This document shows positions 40,474 to 63,355 of a DNA stretch of 64,000 nucleotides, piece after piece. The DNA lies in NCBI GenBank assembly GCA_051294905.1, contig CM119384.1, positions 5,642,001 through 5,706,000 of the forward strand, read 5' to 3'. Source of the stretch: Botryllus schlosseri (taxonomy: Eukaryota). The translations under genes and the position numbers were made by a program. Position 1 is the first letter of the stretch, and every line of letters starts with the position of its first letter. Under the pieces are notes generated by a model. The model made no database searches and was not told where the DNA came from. It saw only the letters and a program-made list of their open reading frames with translations.

Positions 40474-43400
40474 ATGGACTTGGATTTACTGCAAGATGTA
40501 ATCACACTAGTAAGAAATCAAATAGGTCAAGGAGAAGATACTTCTGAAGATGTTACACAAACTGGTAAGTTTTTTAATGTGTGATGTAATGACACAATTA
40601 TCACTAAAAGAAGGGAAGGGGTTGGGCAGGACACAGTGTAAAGGTAAACCTATCTGATTTTGCTACACCAATACATTCCCTATCGATAATAACAGCAAAA
40701 TTTGATTACAGGAATGATCCTTATGTCAGTGAATTTAACCTTCATGTAGTGTAGCTAGCCTCTTGTTCGTTTTGGCAAAATAACAATAGGTGTGACCAAT
40801 GTTCCCTCTAAGCTGCGCACATGCGCAAATGCACAGTGCTGACACGGTCTCTGCGCACAGAAAATTAAAGTTGCCCACAAAAAATCCGAAGTGATGACCT
40901 TTAATTTAGTCGTTACGCACTGTTTTCCAAGGGTCTCCGCAGTGACTTGGTGAGTGTGCGCAAACTCGTCAAAAATTTGTGGGAACATTGGGTGTGACAC
41001 TATTAACGTGGCGCCGGTTACATAGGCCTAGTCGATCAAGTTTAGCACTTTGCTTTGAAACTGCAGCTACCAATTGAAAAGTAATTATAAATATACTATC
41101 GGTATAAGAAATTGTAATTTACGATAAATTCAATTATTGACATAAAAATTGTCGCTCATATGATATGAAAGTTACCATTTAAAGTGCTCAGGCTGACAAA
41201 CAGAACACAATAGGGACCAAGTTAGAAGGCTACCGGGCGGCCCGGGTTCGATTCCGTGTCGGGGGTTATTCTGGGATCCTCGTCCACTGTGAAACGCACT
41301 CACAACAGAACCGCGGCATAGAGATTAACATCGTAAAAGAACTGTAACATCAGGCGCTAGGTCGAGGTGAATGCCAGTTTAAGAGACAGCAACTGGTCGT
41401 TCGGCATCCTCCTGTCTGTTCATTACATTGCATGGTGTCTTGCAACATTGTAAACTGTGTGTGTCTTGTTCAGATGAAAATACAATCTGACAAGTGACAA
41501 TTATTATTATTTACCTACTACATTTCAGAGAAATTGACGCAGATCTCAAGTTTGGATATTAATGAATCTTCTGATGTTGAATCAGGTAACATTATATAGA
41601 TTGCATCAATGACCATGAAATTTATTCTACATGTACAGAAAAGGACCTTGTAATGCAACGTGATTGATATCTCAACACAGTTTGTATCTATTAAGGCAGC
41701 AAAATGTACGAAGTACGCATGCTGAGGATGGTGATCCAAGATTTTGTTGACAATATGCGGTCAGAAGTAACAAATTTCGGCACCTCGCTCGCCCGCTCGA
41801 TCTACAAGATGAAGAAAGCCACTGAGCAAATTCAACAATACGCAGAATTGTATAAAGAAATCCAATTAGAAAGTTGTCACTTGAAAGACTTCTTTAGTGT
41901 GATCAAAGCAACCACACAGATGGATGTCACAGGGAAATCCATTCAGTTCCGTGCTAAGTGGAAAGCGTACAACATCATTTCTTTGACTCACTTACTACTG
42001 ATGTTGAATGAAAACAGAGTGGCAAAAGACGCAAGCAAATACGTCATATTCTGGCTACAGCAGAACATTGGCGCTGAGGCCAGCACAACCAATTTGCATG
42101 GCTTTTCATGTCATGTCTTGGCGATAATACATCAAGCCCAAAACAACGACGAAACCACAGTCCAGTATTATGAAAGTGCATTGGATGCATATCAAGGCGA
42201 CTACGATTGGATCGATGCAAATGCTCAAAAGAACCTGATTCAAGTTATTGATGCGAAACTGGAGCATGTCGGTACGTTGAAATGTATGATAATAGTGATA
42301 ATTTCAGTCGTACCAACCAGGACCACTGATACGGTCGCATGAACCTAACAAGTAAAGAATAACACTATGTGCTTGGTAGTAGAATCAAAAGAATATTAAT
42401 ACCGTCATTTTGCATGTATACTGCGCAAAATTTTACCGAATTTTTGTCCTAAAATCGGGGGGATGCGTATTATGCATGGATACAACAAGCCTTTAAAAAA
42501 ATCTCCTTCGAAATAAAACTTGAAATCACACCTTTCTTCATATTTGTTTTCAATTGCGTATCACATTCAGCCATCGTGCCCAGTAATTCGTATTATCAGT
42601 GTTCACTAGGGTTGTCGAAAATTTGGGAAATCCTAAAAATGCTCCGTTGCAATGTCTTATTCTATATATTATTGATAAAAAACAACAATGAGCCTAAAAG
42701 AAGCTCACAGGAAAGCCGTTAAGATTTCGTGCAAAGCGTTTGAAAGTAGCTGCCGAAAAATGGGCGTGCCACCGACCATAGAACGGCGAGAAGACTAGTA
42801 ATCACGAAACCAGGGCTTTTGATTGGGTAATCGGCTATGCTCCAATGATCACGACAGCAGCAGCTTGCTGGTTCGGTGATCCTGGAGGCGGCGATTCTGA
42901 AAGCGCACTGTAGGTAGGTAGGCAGATAACGATTTGGGATTAATTCAGTGCATGTTGAGGTATGAAATACATGATGAACAAACAACAGCTGTTTCACAAA
43001 GACGTCTTAAGCATGACCGCTTTATTGTGAAGGAAACCGCTGTAGCCTACATGCCTTGTTTTCATCATAGGAAGCAAAGGCGCTTATGCAAGTTGCGAAC
43101 GAATTCCTAGTTTCAGAAGGAATCGATCATCATCGAATACAAATAAACTTAACAATGACACTATAATTTGTGTGATCTTATTGGGATCAGGTTATTGTAT
43201 GTAGTTGAAGTTTTGAATTCTCTAGGGATCGGCTGAATAAGCCGGCTATACTTGGCACTTATCAGATGCTTACAGCAAATTGAATTCAATTGCAAGTGTT
43301 GTCAAAGTCCTTGATGATGACGTAAAAAAGAGGTGTAACCCTAGTAAGCACATACTATGCTGGATATGATAAGTCAAAGTCCTTAATGATCTCGCAGAAA

Positions 43401-46400
43401 AGAGGTGTAAAGGTAAGCACAGACTATGCTGCATAGTATCCAGCTTAGCTGGGATATCATATCCAGCATAGTCTGTGCTTACATTTACACCTCGTTTCTG
43501 CAACAACATTAAGGACTTTGAAAGCACTTACAAGTGATTGAAGTGAATTCAAATTGCTGTATGCATCTTATAAGTGCCAAGCATAACCCGTTGATTCTGC
43601 CGATCCTCAGAGCATTCAAAACTTCAACTATATACTACAACCTGAGCCCAATAAGATCACACAAATTATAGTGTCATTGTTAAGCTTTATATTTGTATTC
43701 AATGAAGATGGATTCCTTCTGAAACTAGGAATTCGTTTGCCACTTGCATAAGCGTCTTTTCTTTCCCTCGATGAAAACAAGGCATGCAGCCTACAGGCGG
43801 TTTCCTTCACAATAAAGCGGTCATGCTTTAGACGTTTTTGTGAAGCAGCTGTTGTTTGTTTACCATGTATTTTGTGCCTCAACATGCCCTTAATTAATCC
43901 TAAATCATTATCTGCCAACATACCTACAATGCGCTTTCAGAATTGCCGCCGATAGCAGATTCCTTGATCGACTAATCAGCAAGCTGCTGCTGTCGTGATC
44001 ATTGAAGCATAGCCCATTAGCCAATCAAGAGTCGTGGTTTCGTGATTACCAGTCTTCTCGACGTTCTATGGTCGGTGGCACGCCCATTCTTCGGCAGCTA
44101 CTTTCAAACGTATTGCACGAAATCTTAACGGCTTTCCTGTGAGCTTCCTTTCGGCCCATTGTTGTTTCTTATCAATGATCTATAGAATAAGATATTACAA
44201 CTGAGGATTTTAAAGATTTTCCAAATTTGGGACAACCCTGGTGTTCACGCACTATAAATAAAATTTCATAAGTTCCCTTATTTTATAAGTTTACTAGTAC
44301 CAAATAAAGGCACCCTCCTCGCCGGCCTGAACTATGGCGTCCCGGGCCTCACAGGCTTTGGCTGCTATCTACAATCGTTTAGAGACAATGCCGTTAAGTG
44401 TATAATGATTAGCGATGGTTATGTCATAATTGTTCAACAGTGACATTGCAAAACAGAATGATATCGAATACTAAAGCATAACCATCGCTGGCAACTTATC
44501 CCACGCGCAAGTTTGTCAACACGAGAAGCGAATGCAGGGTGCGTACTATACATTGGTACAGGCTTTTTACCAGAATTTACATGCCATTTTAAGAGTGCGT
44601 ATTATACATGGAGGGTGGAGGCGTATTATGCATGGAAAATTACGGTAATGGCATTTAGTATCCTTAGTTTACTGAAACTGAAAATTTTCCAAGTTACTTC
44701 CTAATCTCAACTCAAATACTTGACTCCCTGGTAATATCAATCAACCTTTCAACTTGAGATAAATCCTACTAAGGACAGGTACAATAGGTTTTTATCTATA
44801 AATGTAACATGTTATAAATATAATACCTCGCACCACAATAATTCTAAAATGCAATGATAGTATTGTGCTTGTAATATGTAATAGTATTGTGCTTGTAATA
44901 TGTAGATTTCCAAAATAGCCAAGTTGGATTCAAGTATACAATATTTCAGAAGCGTCCATTGGACCTGAGGGTGGAAGCCTTGGGTTGAATAGTTTCCAAG
45001 TACATATACCACAAGACGCGTTGTGTGACACGAAGCAATTTAATCTGAGAACTTCCCTGGTGGAGAATTATGAAGAAGACTACACACCAATAAGCGCTGT
45101 GCTCGAATGCGAACCTCCAACAAACTTTAAATCGGCCGTAAAAATCGCGCTGCCTATGTGGTGCGAAGTTGAGAGCGAAAATGTAATCGCAGAAGTTTTC
45201 TGTCTCCGTAATGAGTCGTCAGAGCCGGAGCTATTGGAAAGCATCGACTTACAAGACGTAAAAGGGGCGGTCACATTCAACAGTAAACACTTTTCATCGT
45301 TTTTCATGATGATCAAAAATACCTTTCTTCGAATGGCCAAGTTCAAGGTGACTATGAGTATATGGAAGAGTCCGGAAGGCAATTATAACTTCATACTATC
45401 GGCAAAGGACAGGACGGTGGAGAAAAAATGGCGCAATGACCTGAGATCACAAGGCTACAGTCCCACAAAAGCCATAATAAACCCGACTGTAGTGAAAAAC
45501 AAACAGAAGTTAACACTGATAATGACATGCGACAAGGGAAACTTTACGAGGTCTCGACAGACCCTGATGCTCGATTTCAACCACAATCCGATTTTCCAGA
45601 AAAATTTCGTTTTGAATTTGGAAGAAGAGGGGCTAAACGAAAGCAGCATAACAGTTACGTGTGAGGTGATGAGTCAGGACACAGTCATCGAGGAGGTTCA
45701 GTGGAGAGAAACAGTGAGAAGTATTGGTGAGACGACATTATCTAAGTTATGAGCAGCGATATCCGTCAGCATTCATAACTATTCATGTACTGCGAATGCA
45801 GGGTGCGTACTATACATGGGTGCAGGCTTGTCCCCAGAATTTACACGCCATTTTAAGGGTGCGTATTATACATGGGGACGTACTATATTCGTAAATTTAA
45901 GGTAATTCCCAAACTGTGTGCCGCCAGAATCTCCAGTGTGCCATGAAATTTTTGGCAAATTTGAAAAATTATGTGCTATATACCGGTATTTAATGAATCA
46001 ACTGAAACAAGAAATCTATCCGCAAATCATGGGCATATTGTCTGGAGTTCCGCTCGCACTGCAACAATGTTTTCCGGAATGTGCTAATAACAACTTTGGG
46101 CATAGTTAATCCATTTGAAAGCTAGGAATCACGCAATCTTTTTACAGAACAGCTCATTGATTTACGATAGGAACCTCTTCAAGGAAAATTGACTGAGTTT
46201 AGACTGTCTGCTTCAAATTCTATGACTTGATCGATGCAAAATCGAGCTAATTATGTAGTCGTTACATCTTCACAGCCACGTGAACGGAGCCGTAACTGCC
46301 TTGCCCATACCCCCTAACTGGAAGCCAAAATCTTTTCGCAAATCAACATAAAGCATAATATTTTCGGCAGACACTCAACTTGAACATTTCTTCGCCTTGG

Positions 46401-47471
46401 CAAGATTTTGTCCGACTGGTATTCTTGACTATTACCACCCCTTCCAGAAAATACAAATAATTCTAAAACAATACCCATAATTTGCAGTGACGACTCATTA
46501 ACCATACTCGCAATTATAAAAACAATACATTATTATTCGGCTATCCCTTGAGGAAGTTGGAATACTATATTCTTCATAATCTGTTGATTAGGGACAATAT
46601 AGAGTCGGCTTTTCGGGTCAGGAATAGTCTTGACTGTGTGGTGTGAACAACTAAGCATCATGATGCACAATTACGTGCCCTAAATTTTTGAAATCATCAC
46701 CTCCATTATTTCCATTAAGAATAAGACAGCCTTACCCTCTTCCACCCTCGAATCAATATAGTGAAGCGTCCATGGAAATAAACCATATGCTAAGTCCAAG
46801 TTCGCATAATTACTTCACATAAGGGTTGGGGTTGACTTATAATTCTACTCGAGTAGCATCACTGATTACTTTGACCACCTGCCCTTCACCATACCACGAC
46901 ACACGCTACAAAATTGTCAGTCAACGCCTCATCTGTTTTCCCATACATTTTACCTCTAAACAGGGGTCCGGTCGGTCGCAGATCAACCGTACGTCTTTGA
47001 AGATTTCTACAACTCAGACGAACCAGACAGTGGCGCTCGTAAGTACCGACTGGAAGACGTTTTCCAAGACGAGATTGTCAAAGAATTTCCCAACAATGCC
47101 ATGTGGAGACGGTTCGCCATTTCAACGCATGGGCTCTCGTTATCTACGAAAAGAGTGGACAATATCGAATCAAATTACCCGCGGGACGTAGAGCGTCAGA
47201 GAATGGCCATGCTGGAATTGTGGAAGGAATTGTGGAAGGACACAGGTCTATCAGCATTCGCAAAGCCTTCTTCAGGTACAGCACTTCAATATACAATTGA
47301 ATATAAGATACAAGCTTCTCTCTCTTTTGATTTGATAGAGAAACTTAGTAACAGGTTAATAATGAGCAATGTGCAACAAAATGCCTAAAGTATCTCTATT
47401 CAGAGAAAGACCTCATAACGAAGATAAGGAGAACCGTGAAAGGCTTTCGAGAACATGAACGGAGCCAGTAG
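40474..47471 (+). CDS. Helical/TPR-like - ZU5 - UPA-like - death-domain protein, paralog 1 (626 aa)
   Basis: Exons 40474-40564, 41529-41585, 41696-42271, 44950-45726, 46964-47275, 47404-47471 total 1881 nt, are open, and all introns are GT-AG phase 1. ZU5 signature IGPEGGSLGLNSFQVHIPQDAL...PISAVLECEPPTNFKSAVKIALP...KHFSSF. Death-domain-like WRRFA..GLS..RVDNIESNYPRDVERQRMAMLELWK. Confidence 0.85.
40797..40990. mobile_element. 194-bp hAT MITE
   Basis: TIRs caatgttccc / gggaacattg. Perfect TSD ggtgtgac at 40789-40796 and 40991-40998. Confidence 0.92.
41226..41515 (+). mobile_element. 5'-truncated tRNA-derived SINE-like insertion
   Basis: Pol III B-box-like gggttcgattcc at ~41244 and an (att)n tail near 41500-41512. 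The segment is absent from the homologous intron of paralog 2 (59530-59580). Confidence 0.6.
42400..44647. mobile_element. Tc1/mariner (Tigger/pogo-like) MITE split by the fold-back element
   Basis: Ends taccgtcattttgcatgtata / tatgcatggaaaattacggta with terminal TA. A further right-end fragment lies at ~45790-45905. Confidence 0.65.
42607..44240. mobile_element. 1634-bp fold-back (whole-length palindromic) element with hAT-type ends
   Basis: Ends tagggttgtc / gacaaccctg. Perfect TSD gtgttcac at 42599-42606 and 44241-44248. The left arm is the reverse complement of the right arm (roughly 85-90% by eye), with the axis at ~43446 (ccagct-t-agctgg). Confidence 0.92.
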
Positions 47472-48454
47472 CAGTACGTCCTCGGAAGACTCACAGTCCG
47501 TGACAATGTCGGAATTAACGACAATAATATGAACAAAATGATTGCCTTCATAATAAAAAAACTGTACCGTACTATTCCGTGTTTTGCCCGAGACATCCAC
47601 ATCTGAAAGGCTGAATCTTGACACACAAATAGTAAACATTGGTTCGCTACCGCAGCAATAGAGGAAGAGACAGAAGTTCACAAATTTGATATCACCACTA
47701 AACATCAAACTATCAGTTTTATATTCAATTTCATTGCAATAAATCGATTGGTTAATTCGATTACACGAGCAGTATCAACACCACACGTATCACTTATCCA
47801 GTGCTATTGAAATCAGTTGAAAACGAAAACAATAATTTTTTCAAAAATTAGACCTGGAAATACTATAATGATCTGTGAGGACAGTAATCATAAAATCTTA
47901 CCACAAATATAAAAAAAAGCCGAGGCTAGAATCCTAAAATCGCTTGAATTTTATATCACAGAATATCAGATACAGGGATGTGATAAGACTATCAGTAATC
48001 GAAACGCTGCTGAAATAAAATTCGGGAGCAAATTCACTCACTGAGAGATGCACCTCTGTGTGTATATAGCTAAAAAGTGCCTAGAACACAATAATTTTGA
48101 ATTTGGCTCTAAAGTGAAACTGCAGAAAAAAACCAGTCATTTTGATTATCTGTAGAATTCCAGTCGGCACTTTTTCAATGTAATTGTAATGTAATTGTAA
48201 TTGAAGTATTTTTATTTTGTGTAATTGTAATTGTAATTTGACAAAAATTTTGCTCAATTACAATTTCAATTACATTAAATTGCTATTGAGACCTGACAAG
48301 AACAACATAAAATAATTGACTTATAATGCATTCTCTTTAAATGTCGACAAGGAATTTGGTGGATCCATTCGCGGAAGCCCTTGACTGCGCCCTTGCGGGT
48401 GAAGTTTTTTATTTTTACCGCTATGCTGGCCTCGGCTGCCTTTGTATACAATTA

Positions 48455-49738: not shown

Positions 49739-51674
49739 ATGGATGAACAGCAAATGAGCTCTTCCGAAACCTGTGCGGAACCATTTCCTACGCCACTGTC
49801 AGAGTTCTTTAAATCTTTGACCAGAACTGAGGCTTGCTGCAACAATTGCAAAAAGAAATTGAAGTTCTCGACCAAGGCTTCATCTAACTTGATCACCCAT
49901 TTGAAGAGATGTTCTCCCAATCTTTACGCTAAATATATAAACCTCAAAGAAAACATGAAGAAGACAAAAGTAGACCAAAGTCAACCACCCATCAAGTCAT
50001 TTTTTCAAACTTCTTCTTCCCAGCGATTTGCTCCATATGATGCCACTCAAAAAGCATTAACCAAAGCTCTACTCAAATCAATAGCTTGTGATCAGTTACC
50101 ATTAAGTATTGTAAATAGCCAATCATTCAGAAATCTGTTGTTGACTGCTGAACCAAGATATGTAATACCAGGACGCTCCACATTTAGAAATTCCCTTATA
50201 CCAATGGTTATTCGGCAAATGGAAGAAGAGATGAGATGTGAAATTGCACGTATGTCAAATGTTTACTTGACAATTGATCTCTGGACTAATCGTAACATGA
50301 CAAGTTTTTTGGGCATCACAATGCATTTTGTTGATGCAGAATGGAAGCTACGCAGCTTTGTCCTGGCAGTGGACTCATTCTTGGAACGACATACAGCTGA
50401 AAACATCGCTGAGGCTTATGACCACGTAATAGAAAAGTATAGACTTACAACAAAAGTGAAAAAGGTTGTGTCGGACAATGCTTCCTCTATGATAAAAGCA
50501 TTTCAGGATTCCCTTCCTGAGTTCACTTTGCATAAAACTGGTGAAGAAATCAATGAGGACAATGAGAAAGAATTGAATCCTGATCCTGAACAAGAAATGT
50601 CTGATGAGGGTGCTGATTTGAATGCTCTTCTCACTTACTTACCAGAAAGAGTAAGCTGTTTTGCTCATACGCAACAACTTTGTATTAAGGATTGTCTGCA
50701 ACATTCGGACTTTGCTAAGTCTTATGTTGGGAAGCAGCTGGGAAAGGTGGCCAAAATTGTGAATTCAGTACGAAAATCAGTAAATGCTACCTCTTATTTG
50801 CAACGTAAAAAAATCACGCTAAGGGCACAGAATGTGACAAGATGGAATTCGCAACTTGTTATGTTGCAAAGTGTCTTAAAGGACCACGAAGAAGTTAACG
50901 CGGCTCTCACCTTGATCCGGTCACGGGAAAAAATAACAAATCAAGATTATTTGGCATTGAGTGAGCTCGTGAGTGTGCTAATGCCTTTCAAAGAAGCAAT
51001 GCAGCAAGTTGAAGGACAAAATATTGTAACATCCTCTTGCATTTGTCCGGTAGTGCTAGGCTTACTGAAAGCAATGGAACAACTAAAAAATTCTAATCTC
51101 CACTATTGTCAGAAATTGACAGTTGACAGAAAAAGACTGTTTCTAAAAGGTTGTTGCCATTTGTAAATTCCTCGGACAACAGACTTGCATCTCTTCTTGA
51201 TCCACGATTTAAAAACAGCTGGATTGAAGATGACTTTGAAAAAGAGGAAGCAATATGTTTGCTAAAAACTCATGTGGCAAGTAGACTTGGTCAGGATGAC
51301 GAAGAGAGCTGTAGCACAGAGGATGAAACCCCTGCAAAAAAGCCAAACCTCTTTAACTTTATGGCAGAAGGTCTGAAAAAAAAAGAACAAGAAATTCAAT
51401 AATTGAAGTCGACGGCAATTTGGGTGAAGAAATCTTGCATTTTGATGAAGACCCACTAATGTATTGGAAGAAGAAGTCAGAAGAATTTCCAACGCTTGCT
51501 GCCTTAGCCAAAGATTATTTGGGGCTAACAGCAACATCAGCCCCGTCAGAAAGAATATTTTCAATTGCGGGCAACTTTTATACGGCAAGAAGAAATTTAC
51601 TGGGGCCAGAAACTTTTCGCACCTTAATGTTCATTAAATGCAATCCAGCAGTTTTTGAACAAGTAAAAATGTAA
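49739..51674 (+). pseudogene. hAT transposase (BED finger, DDE core, dimerisation domain) with two frameshifts
   Basis: BED finger ACCNNCKKKLKFSTKASSNLITHLKRC. Core motifs TIDLW, DNAS, CFAH, TRWNS, LLDPRFK, DPLMYWK, ATSAPSERIFS. Frameshifts fall in A-runs at ~51140 and ~51376. Confidence 0.93.
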
Positions 51675-53413
51675 ATGCAAACAAAAAATTGTAATTTACG
51701 GTATCAGGAGCTTCTTTCCATTTGCATTTATCTGAATTTTACACACACTGACGTCTTGACAGCTACATTTCATTTGCGTTGCTCAGTTTTGTCTATTCGT
51801 TTGATTGCGTTTCATTGCCCGTCTTGCAGCCTATTCGTTGTTAGTCATTGCCAGTCGCTCAAACTTTTGGTTGTTAACTGTCGCTTAAAAACGTTTCCTA
51901 TGATTAGGAATAGTTCGAAAACGTTTTATCTTTTTATTAATTAACGGGTATTTGCGTATCATGAATGAAACATGAATACTTGAATTGTTGTTAATAACGA
52001 CGCTACGGTTGTCAAGGAGCACGGTTGAATTTATGATTATTCAATTACCTGTTCAACAGCCGCAATTGTAATTGTAATTATAATGTAATTGAACCATGCA
52101 CGGAGTAATTGTAATTGTAATTTGATATTTTTAGCATGGAGTAATTATAATTGTAATGTAATTGAAACATGCATGAAAGTAATTGTAATTGTAATTGTAA
52201 TTGAACTGAAATAATGTAATTGATCCAACTCTGGTTGGGACCCCGAAAAATCCCGATCCCGCGATCCCAGAATTTGAAGCAATCCCGTTCCCGGGATTAA
52301 TTCCAATGAAATCCCGGGATTTGTAAACAGCATCTACCAAAGGCTCAAGTAGCGCCACAAATCATATTTTGGTAATAAACCAGTGTCACAAAGACGTCCG
52401 ATTGTCTAAAACAATTCACAATTATCTGATATTAAAACCAACTATAGCTTCCGTCGTAGTCTACAGATCGAAGCAGTGTGACGGAGTAACGGAGCGTTAC
52501 AAAGACGGTGCTGTGGTGGTGAAATGTAGGTCGGAATTCGAAGATGTCAGGGCAAAGAGAAAATCAGATGTGTGGCAAAACTTTTTGGTTTGTATATCTA
52601 CAGAAAAAGCCAAATGCAACTTGGGTGAAGACGTTTTGAAAGCCTCAGGGTCTGGCAGTAAGGGACTGAAACGCGTTCAACGTCCGTACACAAGATAGTA
52701 ATTAAATCATGCATGACTCAATCGGACACGTCAAAGAAAGATCAGGCAAAATGAAGATGAAGATCGACTCATTTTATAAATCGCATAAGCCTCGCCTCGA
52801 TGAACTTCTTTCCCAGTTAACAGCTGTGGACGGGTTAGCATTTAATCAAATTGCCGAAAGTTAACGAATTCGTCGGGCCTTCAAGGCTGACGGCTATGAC
52901 TAGCCAAGATGTCACAAACGGATTCGGGACTTTGTGAAGTAGGCAACACAGTTCAACAATCACGTCTGATAACTCTACGTTAGTACAATGCTCTGCTCTC
53001 TAACATGGGCGACGGGCATAGTCACCATAAAAGAAATAATATTTTATTGAACAAACACAAATACAACAAAAAAATATCATGATCATCAAATTCATTATAT
53101 TTTGAACTATGAGCGGTGCACGATACCTGACAACACTCTGTATAGCAGCTAAAACAGGGGTGACCAAGATTTTTGCTATTCACTGATGCATCTCGATTAC
53201 TCATGTTGCCTGCGGCCGCATTCCGGTGCATAATCGTAATAAAATAACTGGAGGCCAAAAACCCACGTTAAACTGTCCATGGCCATTGTCGGAACACTCT
53301 GGACTAATCTATTTACTCATATCGGCTTACTATGCGCACCGAAATCGTGAGTAGTCATGCTATAAAATACCACAGGAATTCGTCACGTAGTCGCGCGAGG
53401 CGCACAAAATTTC

Positions 53414-56400
53414 ATGTTCCCGAGTTATATATCTCCAAGAGTGTACGCTGTGATCGAAGATCATGGCACGTTCGAATCTGCCATGCCACACCTAACGAAG
53501 TTATATCGGAAGAAAAAGACATCATGTATGCTCAATATTTACTCGCAACTGTTGAGCAAGACTCTGGTGAGACCGTCGCTGATTTCTCACAAAAGTTGAT
53601 CGCTCTATCGCGCGATTGCGATTACGAAGCTGTTGATGCTGAAGTGCATAAGATGGAGGCCGTGCGAGATGCCCGAATTACTGGCTTGCGGTCCTCTGGC
53701 ATTAGATTGCGTCTTCTCGAACATGATGAGTTACCACTCGAAAAAGCCACGCAGATAGCAGACTCTCTAGAACGGGCGCAAGCTTTTTCTTTGTCCTATG
53801 AAATATCGCCTCCTACCGCTAACATGGTTCCGGGCAATCAGAAAATGCAGTAGACTTCACATAAGTCTGATCAATCGCCTGTATTGTCTTGCGGCTCTGA
53901 ATTGGATGCATTACAAAAATCTCCTGAAAAGAAGAAGTGCCTATTTTGTGGCGGTTTCCATACGATGCTTCGCAAGTTCTGTCCAGCCCGAAACAGTGAA
54001 TGCCCGAGATGCGGCCGACAGGGTCACTTTGCCAAAGTTTGCAAATTCAATTTGGCTTCGCTAGCCGGTGTACCCGGTTCTTCGAGGCGTTCGACGTTGC
54101 AAGTTTTTGTTGCTGAGAAGTTGGTCAAAGTACTTGTAGATTCGGGAGCATACGAATGCTACATTAGCTCATCGTTCGCCAAAATTCTCAATCTCGTTCT
54201 TACTCCTTGGGATTACACTATTGCCCTTGCATCAAAGTCATCTTCTGCTCGAGTTATTGGTCACGCATACGCGACACTTCGTATTGAAGATCAAGATTAC
54301 GGCGCAACTCAATTTTGCGTCGTTGATGAATTGTGCGCCGACGTAATTATTGGCTTGGAAGTCCTCAAACAGCATAAGAGACTTATACTTGAATTCGGTG
54401 GGCCAAAAGGAGATCTTGTAATAGGACGCAAGCATTGTGCCGTAGCTGCCGCTAAAATGAGTGATCCGCCTGAAATATTCAAGTTTGTCGATCCAGCTGT
54501 AAAGCCTGTAGCTGTGAAGTCGAGAAAGTACAACTCAGAGGATCGATCTTTCGTACGAAGCGAGGTGTGGAACCTCCGGGATGAAGGCGTTATAGAGAAA
54601 TCGGTATCTCCCTGGCGAGCTCAAGTTTTGGTAACCAAGGACCTTCGACATAAAAAAAGGTTAGTGATTGATTACTCGCGGACGCTAAATCGATACACCC
54701 CTTTGGATGCTTATCCGCTACCGAAAATTGATGATATTGTCAATGAAGTTGCAAAAGGTGTTGTTTATAGCACGATCGATTTGAAGTCTGCCTATCATCA
54801 GGTGTCTCTCCCTGCGGCCGACCGACCCTTCACAGCCTTTGAAGCCGATGGTTGTCTGTATCAATTTCATCGCCTACCCTTCGGCATCACCAATGGGGTC
54901 GCTGCATTTCAGCGGTTCATTGATAAATTCATAGCAGACAACCACTTGAAAGGCACAATAGCTTACTTGGATAATGTAACTATATACGGAAGGAATCAGA
55001 AGGAGCACAATGAGAGGCTCTCTTCGTTCATGACCGCCGCTGATTCAACAAGATTCTAAATAAAAATAAATGTGCGTTTGGGGTTTCGAAGCTCTCACTT
55101 CTCGGCCATCTGATATCCCACAATGATATTTGACCCGATCCGGATCATTTGCGACCCTCAACGCAAATGCCGGCTCCAAGCGATACTCGTAGTCTGGAGC
55201 GCTGTTTGGGCATGTTTTCGTACTATTCAAAATGGATTCCGTCCTTTTCCGAAAAAGTGAAGCCCTTCTGTGAAAATGTCGTGTTCCCCTTGCTTGATAA
55301 ACAGAGAAACGCGTTTGAAACGTTAAAACAGAATCTACTTCTATCTACCTATGATGACGAACCGTTTCAAGTTGAATGCGATGCTTCCGAAGTTGCGATC
55401 GCCTCTATTCTAAGCCAAAAAGGCAGGCCTGTTGCGTTCATGTCTCGAACGCTATCAAAATGCGAAATGAAATACCCTGCTGTAGAAAAGGAAGCTTTGG
55501 TCATTCTCGAGTCTCTTCGAAAATGGGATTATCTCTTGAACCGAAATGAATTTAAATTGATAACGGACCAAAAGGCATTATCTTTCATATTTCAAAAAGA
55601 CCATCTGAGTAAGATTAAATATGCCAAGCTCACACTGTGGAAACTTGAGTTAAGTCCGCTAAAGTATCAAATCATTCATCGCCCTGGATCCGAGAATATC
55701 GGACCTGATACTCTGTCTCGGATTCGTTGTTCGTCCCCAGGCCAGCAACACATGAGCCTTAAAGAGATACATGAAGCGCTGAGTCACCCTGGGATTCGAC
55801 GACTTGATCACTTCATCTGATCCAAGAATCTACCTTTTTCCATGAAGGACGTTAAAAGAACTTGCGCTAAATGACAAATATGTGTAAAATTGAAACCTCG
55901 GTTCTTCATGTCTAATGAAACGAACAAGTTGATAAAAGCCACTCGACAATGGGAACGTATTAGCATCGATTTCAAAGGTCCCGTTGATGGACCCAGAAAG
56001 CTCGTACTTGTTATTATTGACGAATACAGTCGCTTCCTATTTGCTTATCCTTGTCGCGACATGACGTCGTCAATTGTCTCTCATCCTTGTTTTCGCTTGT
56101 CGGTGTACCGGAATACGTATACAGTGACAGGGGTGCCTAATTTCTATCGAAGGAAATCACTGACTTCCTGACACGCAATCGCATTGCCACCAGCAAGTCG
56201 ACTCCTTATCACCCCACAGGCAATTCGCAATGCAAGAGGCTTAATCAAACTTTGTGGAAATCCGTCAAGCTGCTTTTGGAAAGTAGGATATTGCCGGAGA
56301 AACATTGGGAATCGGTTTTGCTGGATGCTCTGCATTCCATCCGGTATCTCTTATGTACGGCGACTAATTGTTCTCCTCATGACAGGTTCTTCAAATCTTC

Positions 56401-57095
56401 AAGTTTGAAGGGAGATCCATGCTGGGCGACTCCATTCCGATTGACATTCCGAAATTTTGAGCGGGACAAAGGCGACCCGCTCGTAAATGAGGTAGAACTA
56501 TTGGATGCCAACCTTAAATACACCTTAACAATTTACAGAAACGGCGTAGAATCAACTGTTTCAGCTAAAGATCTCACACCTTACCCTGTTTCTACAAAGT
56601 CTTCTGAGGCGCTTGAAAGAAAGGAAAAAGAGTTTTCATCTGCCTGCGATACAACTTAGCTGTCATCCGATGAATTTACCACGTCGTCCAGCAGTGAAAG
56701 ATGGCTTGCTTGTTAAACATTTTCTCCACGCCGCGAGGAAGTAGTGCAGCCCAGTATCAGCGTAGATGTTAAAGAAATTCTGCTACGCCGATCCACACGC
56801 ATGCGGCACGCTTCCGAACGTTACGGGCAGTTAACCTCGTAAAAGCTAGTCCCTGTTTCTCATGGTGGGGGTGAATGTGGTGATTGTTGTGATTTTATAA
56901 GTGCTGATTACTGTAATTAGTTTATTTCGCTCTGTTCATTCTTTTCGTACCTCAGTTGCTGATATCTGTGTTGTGGAGTACATGCCTTAGTTCCGTGAAG
57001 TTGACTGTAGCCGAATTATCAATTAATAGAAACCTAGAAAGTTGTCAAGCAGTTTCGTCTACGTCTACGTACGCTTTCCTCGAAAGGTCACTACA
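53414..57095 (+). mobile_element. 5'-truncated, degenerate Ty3/Gypsy LTR retrotransposon
   Basis: Order is gag (YLLATVEQ..RDARITGLRSSGIRLRLLE; CCHC knuckle CPRCGRQGHFAKVC), protease (LVDSGA), RT (IDLKSAYHQ, LPFG, YLDN), RNase H (CDAS) and integrase (ISIDFKGP). Multiple stops and frameshifts. Polypurine tract ggtgggggtgaa precedes the 3' LTR. Confidence 0.93.
56876..57095 (+). repeat. 3' LTR of the Gypsy element (220 bp)
   Basis: Termini TGTGGTGA...TCACTACA directly follow the polypurine tract. No second copy was found upstream of gag. Confidence 0.8.
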
Positions 57096-58081
57096 TGTAT
57101 TTTACTACTTTGCTAATCCCGGGAAATCCCGGGTTTGGGAAGCGAAAATCCAGGGAAATCCCGATCCCCTGATTTCAAATCTGATCCTAAAGTCTTAACC
57201 CTAAACAGCACATCCCACATTTTGCATCAAATGTTGACCAAGCGATATTCATTAACAAAGAATTCCGAGGAAAGCTCTTGCCTAAATTTGCGACAAGTCC
57301 CCGAATTATTAGGGAGAAATGCCACAATTACTGTATAATGCAGAGAACTTGGTTTGATTTGGACACACTCAACAGATTCAGAAAGAGATAGATGCTTTCT
57401 CATGACTTAGGCAGGGGCGGGCAACCTACGGAAGTCGCAATACATTCATTCGGAAATTGGTTACTTTATAGCAGTGGTTATAAACCGGTGTTCAATGGAA
57501 CACAAGGGGTTTCCTCAGCCAGTCTCCGGAGTTTTCTGGAGGTCAATACGTACATTCCAACCATACATATGATTTGTGGTGATAAGGCCGTCTTGGCTAT
57601 CATCAGTTGCAGGTAGCTAGGCCTAGGGTGAGGTTCGAAACCCCATCTTTCTGAAATGCCTATTCTGTCTCCAAGAACATTTGTGGTTACCAGTAAGGAA
57701 TTGGTATCACGCTGTTGGGTTTCTACCATACAATACGATGACACTTTTCAAAGTAAAAGCCTTGCATTTCTGAACTGGTATCTGAAAGGGGAATGGCAGA
57801 AGTCACTCTCATTCGCAATAAATATTCATTGTAATGTTTTCGTTTTGTGTGAAAATTATATTTTAATGGTTTTGTTCTTTCGACACTCTGTGGATGGACA
57901 GTTCATTCGGTTTGTAAAGGATAAGAATCACTGCTTACCAGCTTACCACTAGACACAAGAGAAAACAATGGTAAGGCAAGAAACAAAAGAAACAAGATAT
58001 GTACATTTGTTCATACAATCAACTCTTCAAGATTTTTGTTTTATCAGTAGTGACTTGCACGTTGAATACGCCGACATCATC

Positions 58082-61000
58082 ATGGACTTGGATTTATTGC
58101 AAGATGTAATGACTCTAGTAAGAAATCAAATTGGTCAAGGTGCATTCAAGAATCTGGAAGATACTTCCGATGATGTTACAAAAACTGGTAAGTCTTTTGT
58201 AGTGTAATTACATATAGACAATTATCACCAAAAGTAGGGGAGTGGTAGGGTAGGACACAGAGAAGAAGACCTTAGGTCCTTTCAGTGTAAAGTAAAATTG
58301 AAGAAACAACCCCCTCTTCTCTATTAGATAGGCACTGATAGACACTATATAGTGCACACTGCACAGCGAACAATGAAATATCACATATGGCATTTCGAAT
58401 TTTAGCAGAGCAACACTAAATTACAAGGAATTCCAATAAAAGATCGCAGCTAAATTTGAGAGGATGGTCGTGAATCAAGAACTACAATCACTTGTGTACA
58501 CGAGGCAGCTATAGAATGCAGTTAGGGTTGGATATTTTTCTGCAGATTCAGAAATAAACATATGCTTTCTCATGATTTACAGCGGCGACGAATCTATAAT
58601 ATATAGTCACATTATCGATAGTGAAAGAAAAAACAAGGTATTGAAATTTAACAAAGGAGATGAATCTATTCCGGCAGGAAACTTCAATAGTGAAGAAGCA
58701 ATGAAAACAACGGGTGTCACAATACAGTTAATCTAAAATCGTTCACTATTTAGCTTACCACCAGACCCCGAGAGAAGAAAATAGTAGGGCAACAACAGAT
58801 TTACAATTGTACACCGTACGTAGACCCATACAGTCAGTAGTTCAAGATTTTGCTCAATCATTAGTGCCTTGGTAGTTGAATACTCTTATACTATCATGGA
58901 CTTGGATTTGCTGCAAGATGTAATCACAGTAGTAAGAAATCAAATAGGTCAAGAAGCATTCAAGAATCTACAAGATACTTCTGATGATGTTAAACAAACT
59001 GGTAAGTTTTTTGTAGTGTAATGAAAACAAGACAATCATCATCTAAAGCAGGGCAGTGGTTGGTAGGACACGACACAGTATAAATACAAACCTATCCGAT
59101 CAATTAATCTTCCCTCCATGTTGATGGTGAAATTCGATTACGGTACACGGATGAACCTCATATCAGAGAATGTAACCCGTACAAGGGGGCCAAGTGAGAG
59201 ATACTAGTGAAATCTATGGGTATATTTTGTAGGTTCAATTGCACCGAATGATTACTCCTATGAATCAAGCTGACAAATTCATTGTACAGTTTTCAAAGTT
59301 TTTGCTGGATGGATCATCTACTTTATGCAGTGTACCTAAACATGTATTTTTTATGGCAGAATGACGATTAGTGTGATATTACTAGATGACAGGTCACGAA
59401 GTCACTGAAGATTAGTACTTGGCTTTAAAACTGCAACTACGAATATGAAAGAAAGTATAAATCTGTGAGAAATTATAGTTTACGATCAAATCACCGGCCA
59501 TATGACATGCAAATTTACATTACCAACTGCTCAGGCTGACGCACCAACCAATAGTGCTGAAGTTGAACCTATTACATTTCAGAGAAATTGGCACAGATCT
59601 CAGATTTGGAGATTGGAGGTGCCTCAAGTGATGAATCAGGTAATGTGACATAAATTGCATCGATGATAATAATTTATTGTACTTTATATATTAATATACA
59701 TTGATAACCTTGTGATCACGCAACTTGAATGATATTACACCGCATTCCGTATCTATCAAGGTAGTAAAATGTCTGAAGTACGCATGCTAAGGATGGCGAT
59801 CCAAGATTTTGTTGACAACATGCGATCGGAATTAGCAAATTTTGACACCACGCTCAAGGGTGCACGAGCCGAGAAACACCAACTTCAAGTCACAGAGTCA
59901 GCGATCCAGGAGATAAAGAAATCAATCGAGCAAATTCAACAATACGCAGAATTGTATGAGGAGCTCCAATTAAAAAGTTGTCACTTGAAATACTTCTTCG
60001 ACACGATCAAAGCAACCACCCAAATGGATGTCGCAGCACAATCCATCCAGTTTCGTGCAAAGTGGAAAGCGTACAACATCCTATCTTTGGCTCACTTACT
60101 GCTGATGACAAATGAATACAAGGCCGCAAAAGACGCCAGCAAATATGTCATATTCTGGCTGCAGCAGAACATTGGTGCCGAAGCCAGGACGACTAATTTG
60201 CACGGATTTTCGTGTCACATCTTGGCTATAATACATCGCACCCAAAACAACTACGAAACCGCAGCACAATACTATGAAAGTGCCTTGGACGCTTATCGAG
60301 GCGACTTTGATTGGATCGACGCGAAAGTGCGAAAGAATCTGATTCAAGTTATTGGCGCGAAACTGGAGTATGCCAAAAGAAAGGTCAATTACGTCGGTTG
60401 GTGCAAAGTTTTTAATTGTGATCATTTCAATCATACCAACACGCTTGCCTAAACCCAATAAGCCAAGGATTAAGTCTGTGCTTGGTATAACTTTGAAAGC
60501 AAGAATGCTACACAACGGATTTAGTATCACAGATCACTGAAGGTGAAAAATTTCTATGTGGCTTCTAAATCTAAGAGTACAAGAGTACTAAGAGAGAACA
60601 ATAAGAATTACAACTTCAATATTAGACTTCATAGGTAAAATGAATCTGCTTTTCAACTGAAGACAAATCCTACTCTTTACAGACACACCAAGTGTTGACA
60701 ACATGTAAAACGTTACTGGTATAAATATAAAACCTCGACCGACAATAACTCAAATCCATGATAATAATGCGCTTCCAATATGTACATTTCATTTATAACT
60801 CAAGTTTATTAAAAATATCACTATACCATGCAGAAATCAAACTGATATTCCAATAAGCATCAAATTGCTCAATGATAATTTCTTATGCCGAATTATTTAG
60901 TACTAAGACAACATCGTAAGCTGCGCAGTTCACATTCATGTGCAATATTTCAGAAGCGTTCATTGGACCCGAGGGTGGACGTCTCGGGTTGAACAGTTGC

Positions 61001-62746
61001 CAAGTACAAATACCGCAAGGCGCGTTGTCTGGTAAGAAGCAATTCATTCTCCGAACTTCGCTGGTGGAGAACTACGAAAAAGACTACGCTCCGATAAGCG
61101 CCGTGCTCGAATGCGAGCCTCCGACCAGCTTCAAATCGCCCGTCAAAATAGCGTTGCCGACATGGTGCGAAGTAAAGGGCGAGAAAGTCATCGCGAAAAT
61201 TTTCTGTCTCAGCAACGAGTCCTCAAAACGGGAACTAATAGAGAGCGTCGACTTACAGAACGTGGAAGACGCGATCACATTCGACAGCATACACTTTTCC
61301 TCGTTTTTCATGATGATCAAAAAGACTTTCCTTCGAATGGTCAAGTTCAAGGCGACTATGAACATATGGAATAGTCCGGAGGGAAATTACAACTTCATAC
61401 TATCGGCAAGGGACAGAACGGTGGAGAAGAAGTGGCGAGAAGACCTGCACTCGCAAGGTTACAGTCCCACAAGAGCCATAATGAATCCGATTGTAGTAAA
61501 AAACAAACAGGAGTTGACATTAATCTTGACGTGCGACAAGGGAAACTTTGCGCCGCCTCGACAAATGCTGATTGCGGATTTCTTCCACAATCCGACTTTC
61601 CACAAAAACTTTGTTCTCAACTTGGATGAAGAAGGAACTAACGAAGGCAACATAACAGTGTCGTGTACGGTGATGAGTCAAGGCAGAGTTGTCGAGGAGG
61701 TGCGGTGGAAAGAAACGGCGACAAGCAATGGTGAGGGACAGAGTGACAAGGTCAATTAGTATTCACAAATGTAAACATTTGCTGGTAGTCGGCAACCTAT
61801 CAAACAGAATCAGCCTGTATGTCAATTTCTGACAACAATGCACCAATTTTCACTGTTATTCATACCCAGCAGTCTAACGATACTGACAGTTTTCTTCTGG
61901 ATAAGGTGACTAATTACGCAGATCTCAAGTTTCCTGGTTTCGGTTCAGTTTTTCTCATCACAAATTAATTGATTACTACTACTACCACCATTCTACTTGA
62001 TAATTTTCAAACAAAAATCATCATTTCTATATTTTTGATTTTGTGAAATAGGAAGTAATTTACAAACAGGTTTGTATCACTTCTACGAGTGAAATCGTCA
62101 TCAGCAACTATTTTTCAATTCGCAAGTAGCCCTAATCGATTGGCTAGCGCAAGTAGATTTCTACCTCACCTTCACTCGCAAAAAAGTGATGGAAACATCT
62201 CCCGAAATTACTTTCTACTTTACGCAATACAAAGCGTAAAATTAAGTAGTTTTGCATAGTAGTGGTTAAGTACTCTTAATACACACCCATTTGAGCAAGT
62301 AGGCTAAACCTATTTGGGTGCTACAAAGTCGAAGCACTTCGTTAGTGACCACATCTAATCGCAGGTAATCAGCGCGCCAGACTGGCAGACATTTTCCAAG
62401 ACGAGATCGTCAAGGAATTTTCCAGCAAAACGCTATGGAGACGGTTCGCTGTGTCCTCCCACGGGCTCACGTTATCCGTGGAAAGAGTGAATACTATCGA
62501 ATCGAATTACCCGGCGGACTTAGAGCGCCAGAAAATCGCCATGTTGGAATCGTGGAGGGACATAACTGGAGGAAGCGGTGAGAGAGACTTCTTCCTCTTT
62601 TGATTTGACACAGATATTTAGTAACAAGTTTATAATAATAATCGGCATGTTGTCAAAATTGCTAACCGACGTTCTATTCAGAACACGCTCTCATATTGAA
62701 GATAAGGACTACCGTCGAAAAATTTCGAGAGCACGAACAAACCTAG
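58082..62746 (+). CDS. Helical/TPR-like - ZU5 - UPA-like - death-domain protein, paralog 2 (617 aa), two candidate first exons
   Basis: Exons 58082-58187 or 58896-59001, then 59583-59639, 59761-60396, 60954-61730, 62365-62577, 62682-62746 total 1854 nt and are open, with all introns phase 1. Exon-for-exon homology to paralog 1. IHFSSF motif at 61292-61300. Confidence 0.85.
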
Positions 62747-63292: not shown

Positions 63293-63355
63293 GCTGTATT
63301 TAATTCCGGTTCCGGGCGCATGCCGCGATCTTATCAATAGAAATTGACTGTCTAC

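What the first reader, a model, noticed from the sequence alone, without database searches (positions are those of the whole stretch)
40474..62746. Duplicated PIDD-like TPR-ZU5(HFS)-UPA-death-domain genes: candidate undescribed self-cleaving immune/cell-death sensor family
Seen: two intact 6-exon paralogs (626 and 617 aa), each with an N-terminal helical region containing a TPR-like motif (HGFSCHVLAIIHQAQNN.ET..QYYESALDAY), one ZU5 domain ending in HFS, a ~130-aa predicted beta region and a C-terminal death domain. HFS codons are at 45288-45296 and 61292-61300. Established: ZU5-UPA-DD is the supramodule of PIDD1, UNC5 and ankyrins, and in PIDD1 and UNC5CL the HFS motif drives Nup98-like autoproteolysis between F and S. 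Inference: a TPR-like input may replace PIDD's LRRs, and cleavage would release a UPA-DD fragment able to nucleate a death-domain complex. I do not recognise this architecture as a named gene.
Basis: partly seen in the sequence, partly recalled or inferred. Interest (0 to 1): 0.8.

Follow-up and report, generated by a model that had tools for sequence, protein, structure and literature searches.

The report
Tunicate TPR-like ZU5-UPA-death-domain gene cluster
Two neighbouring genes, part of a four-copy cluster in a sea-squirt-type genome, encode soluble proteins with a helical TPR-like head, a ZU5-UPA module carrying the conserved "HFS" self-cleavage motif, and a death domain; this is an unnamed, tunicate-restricted relative of PIDD1/UNC5CL-type cell-death and immune signalling proteins, and its self-cleavage has not been tested.

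Summary
Both genes have six exons with GT-AG introns, all in phase 1. All five junctions of gene B appear in spliced contigs of public runs, and two also appear in a few raw RNA reads. The HFS codons lie exactly where stated.

- **ZU5-UPA:** an AlphaFold model of the large exon (pLDDT 92) matches UNC5B, ankyrin-B, NLRP1-FIIND and CARD8-FIIND (Z 17-19).
- **HFS:** it lies just before the last ZU5 strand, at about the position of the NLRP1/CARD8 cleavage site.
- **Death domain:** supported only by several weak but consistent sequence signals.
- **Head:** all-helical and generically TPR-like.

dN/dS of 0.15-0.5 shows purifying selection. The genome holds four tandem copies (A, B, a fragment pseudogene and D), nested in an intron of the ELYS gene. 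Styela clava has the same nesting, and its relatives are all annotated "uncharacterized". Only nine relatives were found among 1.84 billion representative proteins.

Best reading: a tunicate-specific, PIDD1/UNC5CL-like self-processing death-domain signalling protein. Cleavage, binding partners and any immune role are inferred, not shown. I rate it a new variant of a known kind.

The parts
40474..40564 (+). Gene A exon 1 (ATG, MDLDLLQDV...; ends in phase 1, donor GTAAGT)
   Evidence: Sequence and homology to gene B exon 1, which is spliced in RNA contigs
41529..41585 (+). Gene A exon 2 (57 nt, 19 acidic/Ser-rich codons)
   Evidence: Aligned to gene B exon 2, whose two junctions are in spliced contigs
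41696..42271 (+). Gene A exon 3: N-terminal all-helical region with a TPR-like core
   Evidence: AF2 model is all-helix, pLDDT 73-94 over residues 62-191. TPR-like structural matches at Z 10-11.6. Pfam TPR families are below cut-off
44950..45726 (+). Gene A exon 4: ZU5 (about aa 243-364) plus UPA (about aa 372-500)
   Evidence: AF2 pLDDT 92.1, pTM 0.86. Foldseek UNC5B E 1e-10, TMq 0.73. VIA-align Z 18.7/18.6/17.6/17.1 to ankyrin-B, UNC5B, rNLRP1 FIIND and CARD8 FIIND
45288..45296 (+). Gene A HFS codons (His355-Phe356-Ser357), the putative autoproteolysis site between F356 and S357
   Evidence: The motif column is conserved in the family alignment. It lies before the last ZU5 strand in the model
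46964..47245 (+). Gene A exon 5: linker plus first part of the death domain
   Evidence: Pfam Death E 7.7e-4, below cut-off. Profile hits to solved death domains. The donor is placed by homology to gene B's RNA-supported junction
47404..47471 (+). Gene A exon 6: last death-domain helices and stop codon
   Evidence: The C-terminal peptide is homologous to those of gene B, copy D and Styela clava P0010
58082..58187 (+). Gene B exon 1 (distal copy, the one used in the RNA contig)
   Evidence: Joint 58187>59583, GT..AG, in a contig of X5
59583..59639 (+). Gene B exon 2 (57 nt)
   Evidence: Joints 58187>59583 and 59639>59761 in contigs of X1/X5
59761..60396 (+). Gene B exon 3: N-terminal helical/TPR-like region
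   Evidence: Joints. Pfam TPR_7 E 3.7e-5, 23.9 bits against a cut-off of 27.9
60954..61730 (+). Gene B exon 4: ZU5-UPA
   Evidence: Joints 60396>60954 and 61730>62365. 74% identical to the modelled exon of gene A. Pfam ZU5 E 0.015, below cut-off
61292..61300 (+). Gene B HFS codons (His380-Phe381-Ser382)
62365..62577 (+). Gene B exon 5: first part of the death domain
   Evidence: Pfam Death E 8.3e-4. Joint 62577>62682 in a contig of X1 and two raw RNA reads of X16
62682..62746 (+). Gene B exon 6: end of the death domain and stop codon
58896..59001 (+). Second, proximal copy of exon 1 inside gene B intron 1 (open, with a GTAAGT donor, but not seen spliced)
   Evidence: blastn shows the exon-1 region of A twice upstream of B. 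The only contig over it (X1 record 1) runs unspliced through the donor

Best explanation
These are two expressed or expressible members of a tunicate-restricted family of soluble cytosolic death-fold signalling proteins. Each protein has four parts:
- a short acidic leader;
- an all-helical TPR-like head, presumably a protein- or ligand-binding or regulatory domain;
- one ZU5-UPA module of the UNC5/ankyrin/PIDD/FIIND fold;
- a C-terminal death domain.

Proposed mechanism (inferred). The conserved His-Phe-Ser at the end of ZU5 undergoes Nup98/PIDD1-type N-O acyl-shift autoproteolysis between Phe and Ser (A: F356|S357; B: F381|S382). This would give an N-fragment of about 40-43 kDa (head plus ZU5) and a UPA-DD fragment of about 27-31 kDa, which stay associated non-covalently. 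A stimulus acting on the head would free UPA-DD, which would then recruit a death-domain partner for caspase or NF-kB-type signalling.

Shown: gene structure, transcription of B, the ZU5-UPA fold, position and conservation of HFS, purifying selection, and a conserved nested locus.
Inferred: cleavage, fragment release, binding partners and any immune or cell-death role.
For: - **Splicing:** spliced RNA contigs and raw reads cover all five junctions of B.
- **Open reading frames:** intact ORFs of 616 and 617 aa, with every intron in phase 1.
- **ZU5-UPA fold:** AF2 model of exon 4 has pLDDT 92.1. Foldseek top hit is UNC5B 3g5b at E 1e-10, TMq 0.73. Swiss-Prot models of UNC5A-D and UNC5CL match at TM 0.69-0.77, followed by SH3BP4 and MACC1 (about 0.6) and, more weakly, DTHD1 and ankyrin-3 (0.36-0.38). 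VIA-align gives Z 18.7 ankyrin-B, 18.6 UNC5B (rmsd 2.9 over 248 residues), 17.6 rNLRP1 FIIND and 17.1 CARD8 FIIND.
- **HFS position:** it is model residues 113-115, in front of the last ZU5 strand. The aligned ranges put rNLRP1 F968|S969 at about 113/114 and CARD8 F296|S297 at about 115/116 (cleavage sites from bioRxiv 10.1101/2020.08.13.250241 and PMC3210808). [quoted passage not shown]
- **HFS conservation:** HFS or HFT is kept in A, B, D, P0001, P0010, P0012, P0008 and P0015, despite only 17-40% identity for the non-window members.
- **Death domain:** Pfam Death is the only family hit, in 5 of 5 members (best E 5e-4). A profile search of the PDB puts ankyrin, FADD, PIDD, RIPK1, Fas and CRADD death domains in its top 25 rows, and TNFR1 further down. 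The nearest atlas clusters are Death.
- **Selection:** dN/dS is 0.15 (ZU5) to 0.45-0.5 (DD).
- **Solubility:** no hydrophobic segment was found.
- **Conserved locus:** the same architecture and nested locus occur in Styela clava, and the same exon order in a third organism's contig.
Against: - No experiment or peptide evidence for cleavage exists.
- All Pfam hits (ZU5, Death, TPR) are below the curated cut-offs, and Pfam UPA, FIIND and Peptidase_S68 gave nothing at E<=10.
- The death domain was not modelled.
- Some relatives lack the motif: P0014 has WVN, and the first modules of P0005 and P0006 have YHT and YHM. The fold therefore does not require it, and UNC5 and ankyrin use the same fold without cleaving.
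- The residue-level equivalence of HFS to known cleavage sites rests on range offsets, not on a printed structural alignment.
- Transcription of gene A was not tested. Its exon 4 is barely represented in the probable RNA runs (share 0.07).
- Expression of B in the two raw RNA runs is very low.
Confidence: 0.6

Rival explanations
1. A non-cleaving ZU5-UPA-DD scaffold or adaptor. The supramodule works as in UNC5 receptors and ankyrins, as a closed auto-inhibited binding platform, and HFS is kept only because the buried Phe and neighbouring residues stabilise the ZU5 sandwich.
For: The best structural matches are UNC5B and ankyrin-B, which do not autoprocess. Some family members lack HFS (P0014, and the first modules of P0005 and P0006). 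No Peptidase_S68 or FIIND profile hit was found.
Against: The full H-F-S/T triplet, not just the Phe, is conserved across members that are only about 30-40% identical. In gene B the His of HFS is the only His in the whole ZU5 domain. The motif lies at the position of the NLRP1/CARD8 cleavage site.
Confidence: 0.2
2. A fast-evolving tunicate co-orthologue of vertebrate UNC5CL (ZU5-UPA-DD with HFS) that acquired a different N-terminus. On this reading it is a lineage expansion of a described gene, not a separate family.
For: The core architecture is the same: a single ZU5 with HFS, then UPA and DD. Human and mouse UNC5CL models match at TM 0.71-0.73. Tunicate proteins are known to evolve fast (general knowledge).
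Against: A phmmer search of 1.84 billion representatives with the ZU5-UPA exon returned only nine proteins. Six are Styela clava entries and three are unnamed contig ORFs; none bears an UNC5CL, UNC5 or PIDD name. Structural identity is only 12-14%, no closer to UNC5CL than to UNC5A-D. The 240-aa helical head has no counterpart in UNC5CL, and there is no hydrophobic anchor. No phylogeny was made.
Confidence: 0.15
3. Decaying duplicates or mis-joined ORFs that make no functional protein.
For: The cluster contains a fragment pseudogene (copy C). Copy D has a phase mismatch between exons 2 and 3. Transposons lie between A and B.
Against: A and B have complete ORFs with canonical splice sites. B is spliced in RNA. 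dN/dS is 0.15-0.5 in every domain. The exon-4 module folds at pLDDT 92. The locus is conserved in Styela clava.
Confidence: 0.04

Closest known systems
UNC5CL (UNC5C-like, ZUD)
   Same: A single ZU5 followed by UPA and a C-terminal death domain. The HFS motif at the ZU5 end is reported to autoprocess (my knowledge of the UNC5CL literature, not re-read here). Structural match TM 0.71-0.73.
   Different: Only 12-13% identity in the structural alignment and no sequence-level hit. This family has a ~240-aa acidic leader plus helical TPR-like head and no hydrophobic segment, whereas UNC5CL is described as membrane-anchored (my knowledge). This family is restricted to tunicates so far.
PIDD1
   Same: HFS-type autoproteolysis motifs at ZU5 ends (F445|S446 and S588; PMC9162469). 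UPA-DD as the signalling fragment. A repeat-type N-terminal domain in front of the ZU5 module.
   Different: PIDD1 has LRRs and two ZU5 domains with two cleavage sites. Here there is a TPR-like helical head, one ZU5 and one HFS. No sequence-level hit was found.
FIIND of NLRP1 and CARD8
   Same: The ZU5-UPA fold (Z 17.6 and 17.1). The cleavage position is equivalent by offset. The logic is a repressive N-fragment plus a UPA-death-fold C-fragment.
   Different: FIIND uses SF|S plus a remote catalytic His (rNLRP1 H942, CARD8 H270; bioRxiv 10.1101/2020.08.13.250241, PMC3210808). No such His exists here: gene B's ZU5 has only the His of HFS. The output domain is a death domain, not a CARD. No Pfam FIIND hit.
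UNC5A-D netrin receptors and ankyrins (ZU5-UPA-DD supramodule)
   Same: The best structural matches for the ZU5-UPA module, with the same domain order ZU5-UPA-DD.
   Different: Those are large membrane receptors or cytoskeletal adaptors without an autoprocessing HFS. This family is small, soluble, carries HFS and has a different N-terminus.

Membership tests
ZU5-UPA-DD supramodule proteins (UNC5 / ankyrin / PIDD / UNC5CL) | ZU5 beta-sandwich fold | tested here: met
   Model residues 1-122 align to ankyrin ZU5 structures (Z 12.1-12.5, rmsd 2.2-2.8) and within UNC5B and ankyrin-B (Z 18.6-18.7). Pfam ZU5 is only E 0.015, below cut-off.
ZU5-UPA-DD supramodule proteins (UNC5 / ankyrin / PIDD / UNC5CL) | UPA domain directly after ZU5 | tested here: met
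   Model residues ~130-258 are covered by the alignments to UNC5B 547-828, ankyrin-B, rNLRP1 and CARD8. No Pfam UPA hit.
ZU5-UPA-DD supramodule proteins (UNC5 / ankyrin / PIDD / UNC5CL) | C-terminal death domain | tested here: inconclusive
   Pfam Death is the only family hit in 5 of 5 members but is below the cut-off (19-20 bits against 22.6). PDB profile hits are almost all death domains at E 0.013-1.6. The nearest atlas feature clusters are Death at score 0.86. No structure model was made.
PIDD1 | N-terminal leucine-rich repeats | tested here: not met
   No LRR hit. The N-terminus is all-helical and TPR-like.
PIDD1 | Two ZU5 domains with two HFS sites | tested here: not met
   One ZU5 and one HFS per protein.
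HFS-type autoprocessing ZU5 (PIDD1, UNC5CL; Nup98-like chemistry) | His-Phe-Ser/Thr at the C-terminal end of ZU5, before its last strand | tested here: met
   HFS is at model residues 113-115, before strand SFFMMIK, and is conserved in the family. Position criterion taken from PMC3210808.
HFS-type autoprocessing ZU5 (PIDD1, UNC5CL; Nup98-like chemistry) | Actual cleavage between Phe and Ser, abolished by Ser-to-Ala | not testable with these tools
   Needs protein expression and a mutant.
FIIND (NLRP1 / CARD8) | SF|S motif with a remote catalytic His (rNLRP1 H942 / CARD8 H270), followed by a CARD | tested here: not met
   The motif is HFS. There is no conserved His about 26 residues upstream, and gene B's ZU5 has a single His, that of HFS. 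The C-terminus is Death-like, not a CARD. No Pfam FIIND hit.
UNC5CL orthologue | Sequence-level orthology and an N-terminal membrane anchor | tested here: not met
   phmmer over 1.84 billion representatives found only nine proteins, six from Styela clava and three unnamed contig ORFs. Maximum Kyte-Doolittle 19-residue mean is 0.8-0.9, so no transmembrane segment. No phylogeny was made.
TPR repeat proteins | Tandem 34-residue helix-turn-helix repeats recognised by TPR profiles | tested here: inconclusive
   One TPR_7/TPR_14 match, below cut-off (B: 23.9 bits against 27.9). The AF2 model is helical with TPR-like structural matches at Z 10-11.6, a range that is common for helical repeats. Atlas features lean towards TPR.

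The most novel reading that the evidence does not exclude
The family is a tunicate 'tripwire' sensor that works by the NLRP1/CARD8 logic but with death-domain output. The TPR-like head would be a bait or binding surface whose degradation or engagement frees a pre-cleaved UPA-DD fragment, which self-assembles and triggers caspase or NF-kB-type signalling. It would be one branch of a wider ascidian toolkit in which the same HFS-bearing ZU5-UPA module is fused to NACHT-LRR (Styela P0006), to UBA repeats (P0015), and, according to an untested note from this scan, to RHIM-like tails. That would mean autoprocessing ZU5-UPA immune sensors diversified in the sister group of vertebrates independently of the FIIND.
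Probability: 0.2. Interest if true: 0.75.

Novelty: new variant of a known kind. Interest (0 to 1): 0.5.

Why it matters
ZU5-UPA modules that cut themselves underlie the PIDDosome and the NLRP1 and CARD8 inflammasomes. Where and how often this device was recruited outside vertebrates is poorly mapped. Here the module, with the PIDD/Nup98-type HFS motif intact and under purifying selection, sits in a small, soluble protein with an unfamiliar helical head and a death domain. It is amplified in tandem at a locus conserved between two ascidian lineages. If cleavage is confirmed, this would be a simple and tractable invertebrate-chordate model for release of a death-fold fragment by autoprocessing. 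It would also be an entry point to death-domain signalling in tunicates. The related NACHT-LRR-ZU5-UPA protein of Styela clava hints at NLRP1-like architectures outside vertebrates.

Tried and rejected
- **First gene models.** I started with four exons. They missed the 57-nt exon 2 and the intron inside the death domain, and wrongly made B's death domain look truncated. RNA joints corrected this.
- **Which exon 1 for B.** I first used the proximal copy (58896-59001). The spliced contig uses the distal one.
- **Pfam scans of single exons.** Only sub-threshold hits appeared, and there was nothing for UPA, FIIND or Peptidase_S68 at E<=10.
- **ZU5-UPA profile against PDB sequences.** Only marginal ankyrin ZU5 hits, E 0.02-0.05.
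- **Fold searches of the N-terminal model.** They gave only generic TPR-like, 14-3-3 and SMYD-C-terminal matches, so no specific family can be named.
- **Literature searches.** ZU5 plus death domain plus ascidian or amphioxus found no description of this architecture. A search for UNC5CL with HFS returned nothing relevant.
- **Pfam ZU5 against the window's own genome.** Only four exon hits at three loci, which is not enough to decide whether a separate UNC5CL or PIDD1 orthologue exists.
- **Not done.** I did not run complex prediction, because no specific binding pair is claimed. The first look-up of encoding contigs for P0001 failed on queueing and worked later.


Full report
**1. What is in the sequence**

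The window is eukaryotic, at about 40% GC. It lies at G000:C14:5642001-5706000 of a 495.5-Mb assembly. Open frames at 41.7-42.3, 44.9-45.7 and 47.0-47.4 kb are repeated at 59.8-60.4, 60.9-61.7 and 62.3-62.7 kb. blastn between the two regions matches exactly these blocks at 70-81% identity.

My first four-exon models were incomplete. Laying public runs on 57600-63500 showed GT..AG joints in contigs of two runs (X1, X5):
- 58187>59583
- 59639>59761
- 60396>60954
- 61730>62365
- 62577>62682

Two raw RNA-seq reads (X16) support the last joint, and two reads of X20 span the exon 4/5 junction.

Gene B therefore has six exons: 58082-58187, 59583-59639, 59761-60396, 60954-61730, 62365-62577 and 62682-62746.

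Gene A, built by alignment to B, also has six exons: 40474-40564, 41529-41585, 41696-42271, 44950-45726, 46964-47245 and 47404-47471. Its C-terminal peptide matches those of B, copy D and the Styela clava RefSeq protein P0010. This supports the spliced ending over read-through. Gene A's junctions themselves were not tested with reads.

All introns are in phase 1, so each domain-coding exon is a symmetric 1-1 module. The HFS codons are at 45288-45296 and 61292-61300, exactly as stated.

**2. Are they real genes?**

A and B are 73% identical in protein. dN/dS by domain:

| Region | dN/dS |
|---|---|
| Helical head | 0.16-0.22 |
| ZU5 | 0.14-0.15 |
| UPA | 0.23-0.52 |
| Death domain | 0.20-0.48 |

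This is purifying selection throughout. B is transcribed and spliced. The word index suggests A is rarer in the probable RNA runs (share 0.07 against 0.39 for B), and its expression remains untested.

**3. The cluster and its locus**

The genome holds four tandem copies and no others:
- A and B, both intact.
- A fragment (copy C, just beyond the window's end) with a frameshift and stop codons.
- Copy D, which is open for 568 aa from an ATG in exon 3 but has a phase mismatch between exons 2 and 3.

B also carries a second, apparently unused copy of exon 1 in its first intron.

The whole cluster lies inside an intron of an ELYS (AHCTF1-type) gene on the opposite strand. The ELYS domain is at window 33804-33995(-), and the ELYS beta-propeller exons are at C14:5721426-5724534(-). 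In Styela clava, three tandem paralogues lie within the span of its annotated ELYS gene in the same way. The locus therefore predates the split of the two lineages.

**4. Domains**

*ZU5-UPA (exon 4, 258 aa).*
- With a 14-sequence alignment, AlphaFold2 gave pLDDT 92.1 and pTM 0.86.
- Foldseek against the PDB: UNC5B cytoplasmic domain at E 1e-10 and TMq 0.73, then ankyrin ZU5-ZU5-UPA-DD, rNLRP1 FIIND and CARD8 FIIND.
- Foldseek against Swiss-Prot models: UNC5A-D and UNC5CL (TM 0.69-0.77), then SH3BP4 and MACC1 (about 0.6), and more weakly DTHD1 and ankyrin-3 (0.36-0.38).
- VIA-align: Z 18.7 (ankyrin-B), 18.6 (UNC5B, rmsd 2.9 over 248 residues), 17.6 (rNLRP1 FIIND), 17.1 (CARD8 FIIND). Isolated ZU5 structures cover model residues 1-122 and the UPA part covers about 130-258.
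- Sequence profiles alone do not show this. Pfam ZU5 reaches only E 0.015, and UPA, FIIND and Peptidase_S68 give nothing.

*HFS.*
- It occupies model residues 113-115, directly before the strand SFFMMIK that ends ZU5.
- From the aligned ranges, rNLRP1 F968|S969 (bioRxiv 10.1101/2020.08.13.250241) falls at about model 113/114, and CARD8 F296|S297 at about 115/116. This is an offset estimate, not a residue-level alignment.
- The triplet is HFS in A, B, D, P0001, P0010, P0008 and P0015, and HFT in P0012. It is lost in P0014 and in some modules of P0005 and P0006.
- FIIND proteins use SF|S plus a remote catalytic His (rNLRP1 H942, CARD8 H270). Here no such His exists: gene B's ZU5 has only the His of HFS. 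The motif is of the PIDD1/Nup98 type (PIDD1 F445|S446 and S588; PMC9162469).

*Death domain.*
- Pfam Death is the only family hit for the C-terminal pieces of A, B, D, P0010 and P0012, but it is always just under the cut-off (best E 5e-4).
- A profile of the five pieces hits ankyrin-1, FADD, PIDD, RIPK1, Fas and CRADD death domains in its top 25 PDB rows, at E 0.013 upward; TNFR1 follows among the last rows.
- Language-model features of P0010:436-531 are nearest to Death clusters.
- These are three weak lines that agree.

*Head (exon 3).*
- AlphaFold2 gave eight helices. The first 60 residues are low-confidence and residues 62-191 have pLDDT 73-94.
- Matches are generic TPR-like superhelices (PlcR, TSK, KLC, PcrH, SMYD C-terminal lobe, 14-3-3) at Z 10-11.6, which is within the range common for helical repeats.
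- Pfam TPR hits are sub-threshold.
- "TPR-like" is fair. No specific family can be named.

*Solubility.* There is no hydrophobic segment, so the proteins are probably soluble and cytosolic.

**5. Distribution and naming**

phmmer with the ZU5-UPA exon against 1.84 billion representative proteins found only nine proteins. Six are Styela clava "uncharacterized protein" entries and three are unnamed contig ORFs.
- P0010 and P0012 share the full architecture.
- One contig (L009) carries head, ZU5-UPA(HFS) and death-domain exons in the same order.
- More distant hits reuse the module in other settings: P0006 has NACHT-LRR followed by two such modules, and P0015 has UBA repeats followed by one.
- The nearest relatives suggest the window comes from an ascidian. 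I did not identify the species.
- Paper searches found no description of this architecture.

**6. Mechanism and rivals**

Best explanation (0.6): a PIDD1/UNC5CL-like autoprocessing death-domain signalling protein. Cleavage would occur at F356|S357 in A and F381|S382 in B, giving fragments of about 40-43 kDa and 27-31 kDa. The TPR-like head would be the regulatory or input domain and UPA-DD the output.

Rivals:
- A non-cleaving UNC5/ankyrin-type scaffold (0.2).
- A divergent UNC5CL co-orthologue rather than a separate family (0.15). This rival concerns classification and can be true together with the proposed mechanism.
- Non-functional duplicates (0.04), essentially excluded for B.

**7. Verdict**

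The architecture and the claim that the gene is undescribed are supported. Self-cleavage and an immune or cell-death role are plausible but untested. This is a new variant of a known kind, namely ZU5-UPA-DD proteins with an HFS site, and it is of moderate interest.

Noticed in passing
window 15418-16500(-), 33804-33995(-); G000:C14:5721426-5724534(-): An ELYS/AHCTF1-type nucleoporin gene on the minus strand spans the whole cluster. The ZU5-UPA-DD genes are nested in one of its introns, and Styela clava shows the same nesting (L008).
   Followed up: partly
window 49739-51674(+): A hAT-type transposase between genes A and B. It has a 475-aa ORF with zf-BED, and a separate ORF with the hAT C-terminal dimerisation domain (E 1.9e-17). 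The frame is broken between the two.
   Followed up: partly
window 53332-56659(+): A Ty3/gypsy-type LTR retrotransposon between A and B with aspartyl protease, reverse transcriptase, RNase H and an integrase core. These lie in several ORFs separated by frame breaks. I only described it.
   Followed up: partly
window 42607-44240 (intron 3 of gene A): Near-mirror ORFs on opposite strands (42922-43107 on + and 43628-43921 on -) indicate a large inverted repeat.
   Followed up: no
window 97-585(+) and 29162-30539(+): Two sets of alpha-L-fucosidase exons (Alpha_L_fucos and Fucosidase_C domains), suggesting a tandemly duplicated fucosidase gene upstream.
   Followed up: partly
window 47215-47238(+): A perfect 12-nt tandem duplication (two copies of GAATTGTGGAAG) inside gene A's death domain, giving ELWKELWK. 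It is absent from gene B.
   Followed up: no
Styela clava proteins P0006, P0005, P0015: The same ZU5-UPA-like module occurs after NACHT-LRR (P0006, two modules), doubled on its own (P0005), and after UBA repeats (P0015). These proteins end in Q/N-rich tails instead of a death domain.
   Followed up: no
G000:C14:5706925-5708324 (just beyond the window) and L007 (copy D): Copy C is a fragment with a frameshift and stop codons. Copy D is open from exon 3 onward (568 aa), but its 72-nt exon 2 does not join exon 3 in frame.
   Followed up: partly
Fold search, rows 1-2: The two best AlphaFold-DB cluster matches to the helical head are short uncharacterised proteins (A0A6F9DH46, H2ZJZ5). From memory, their accession series belong to other ascidians (Phallusia, Ciona savignyi). 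If so, the head domain may be present in phlebobranch ascidians too. This was not verified.
   Followed up: no
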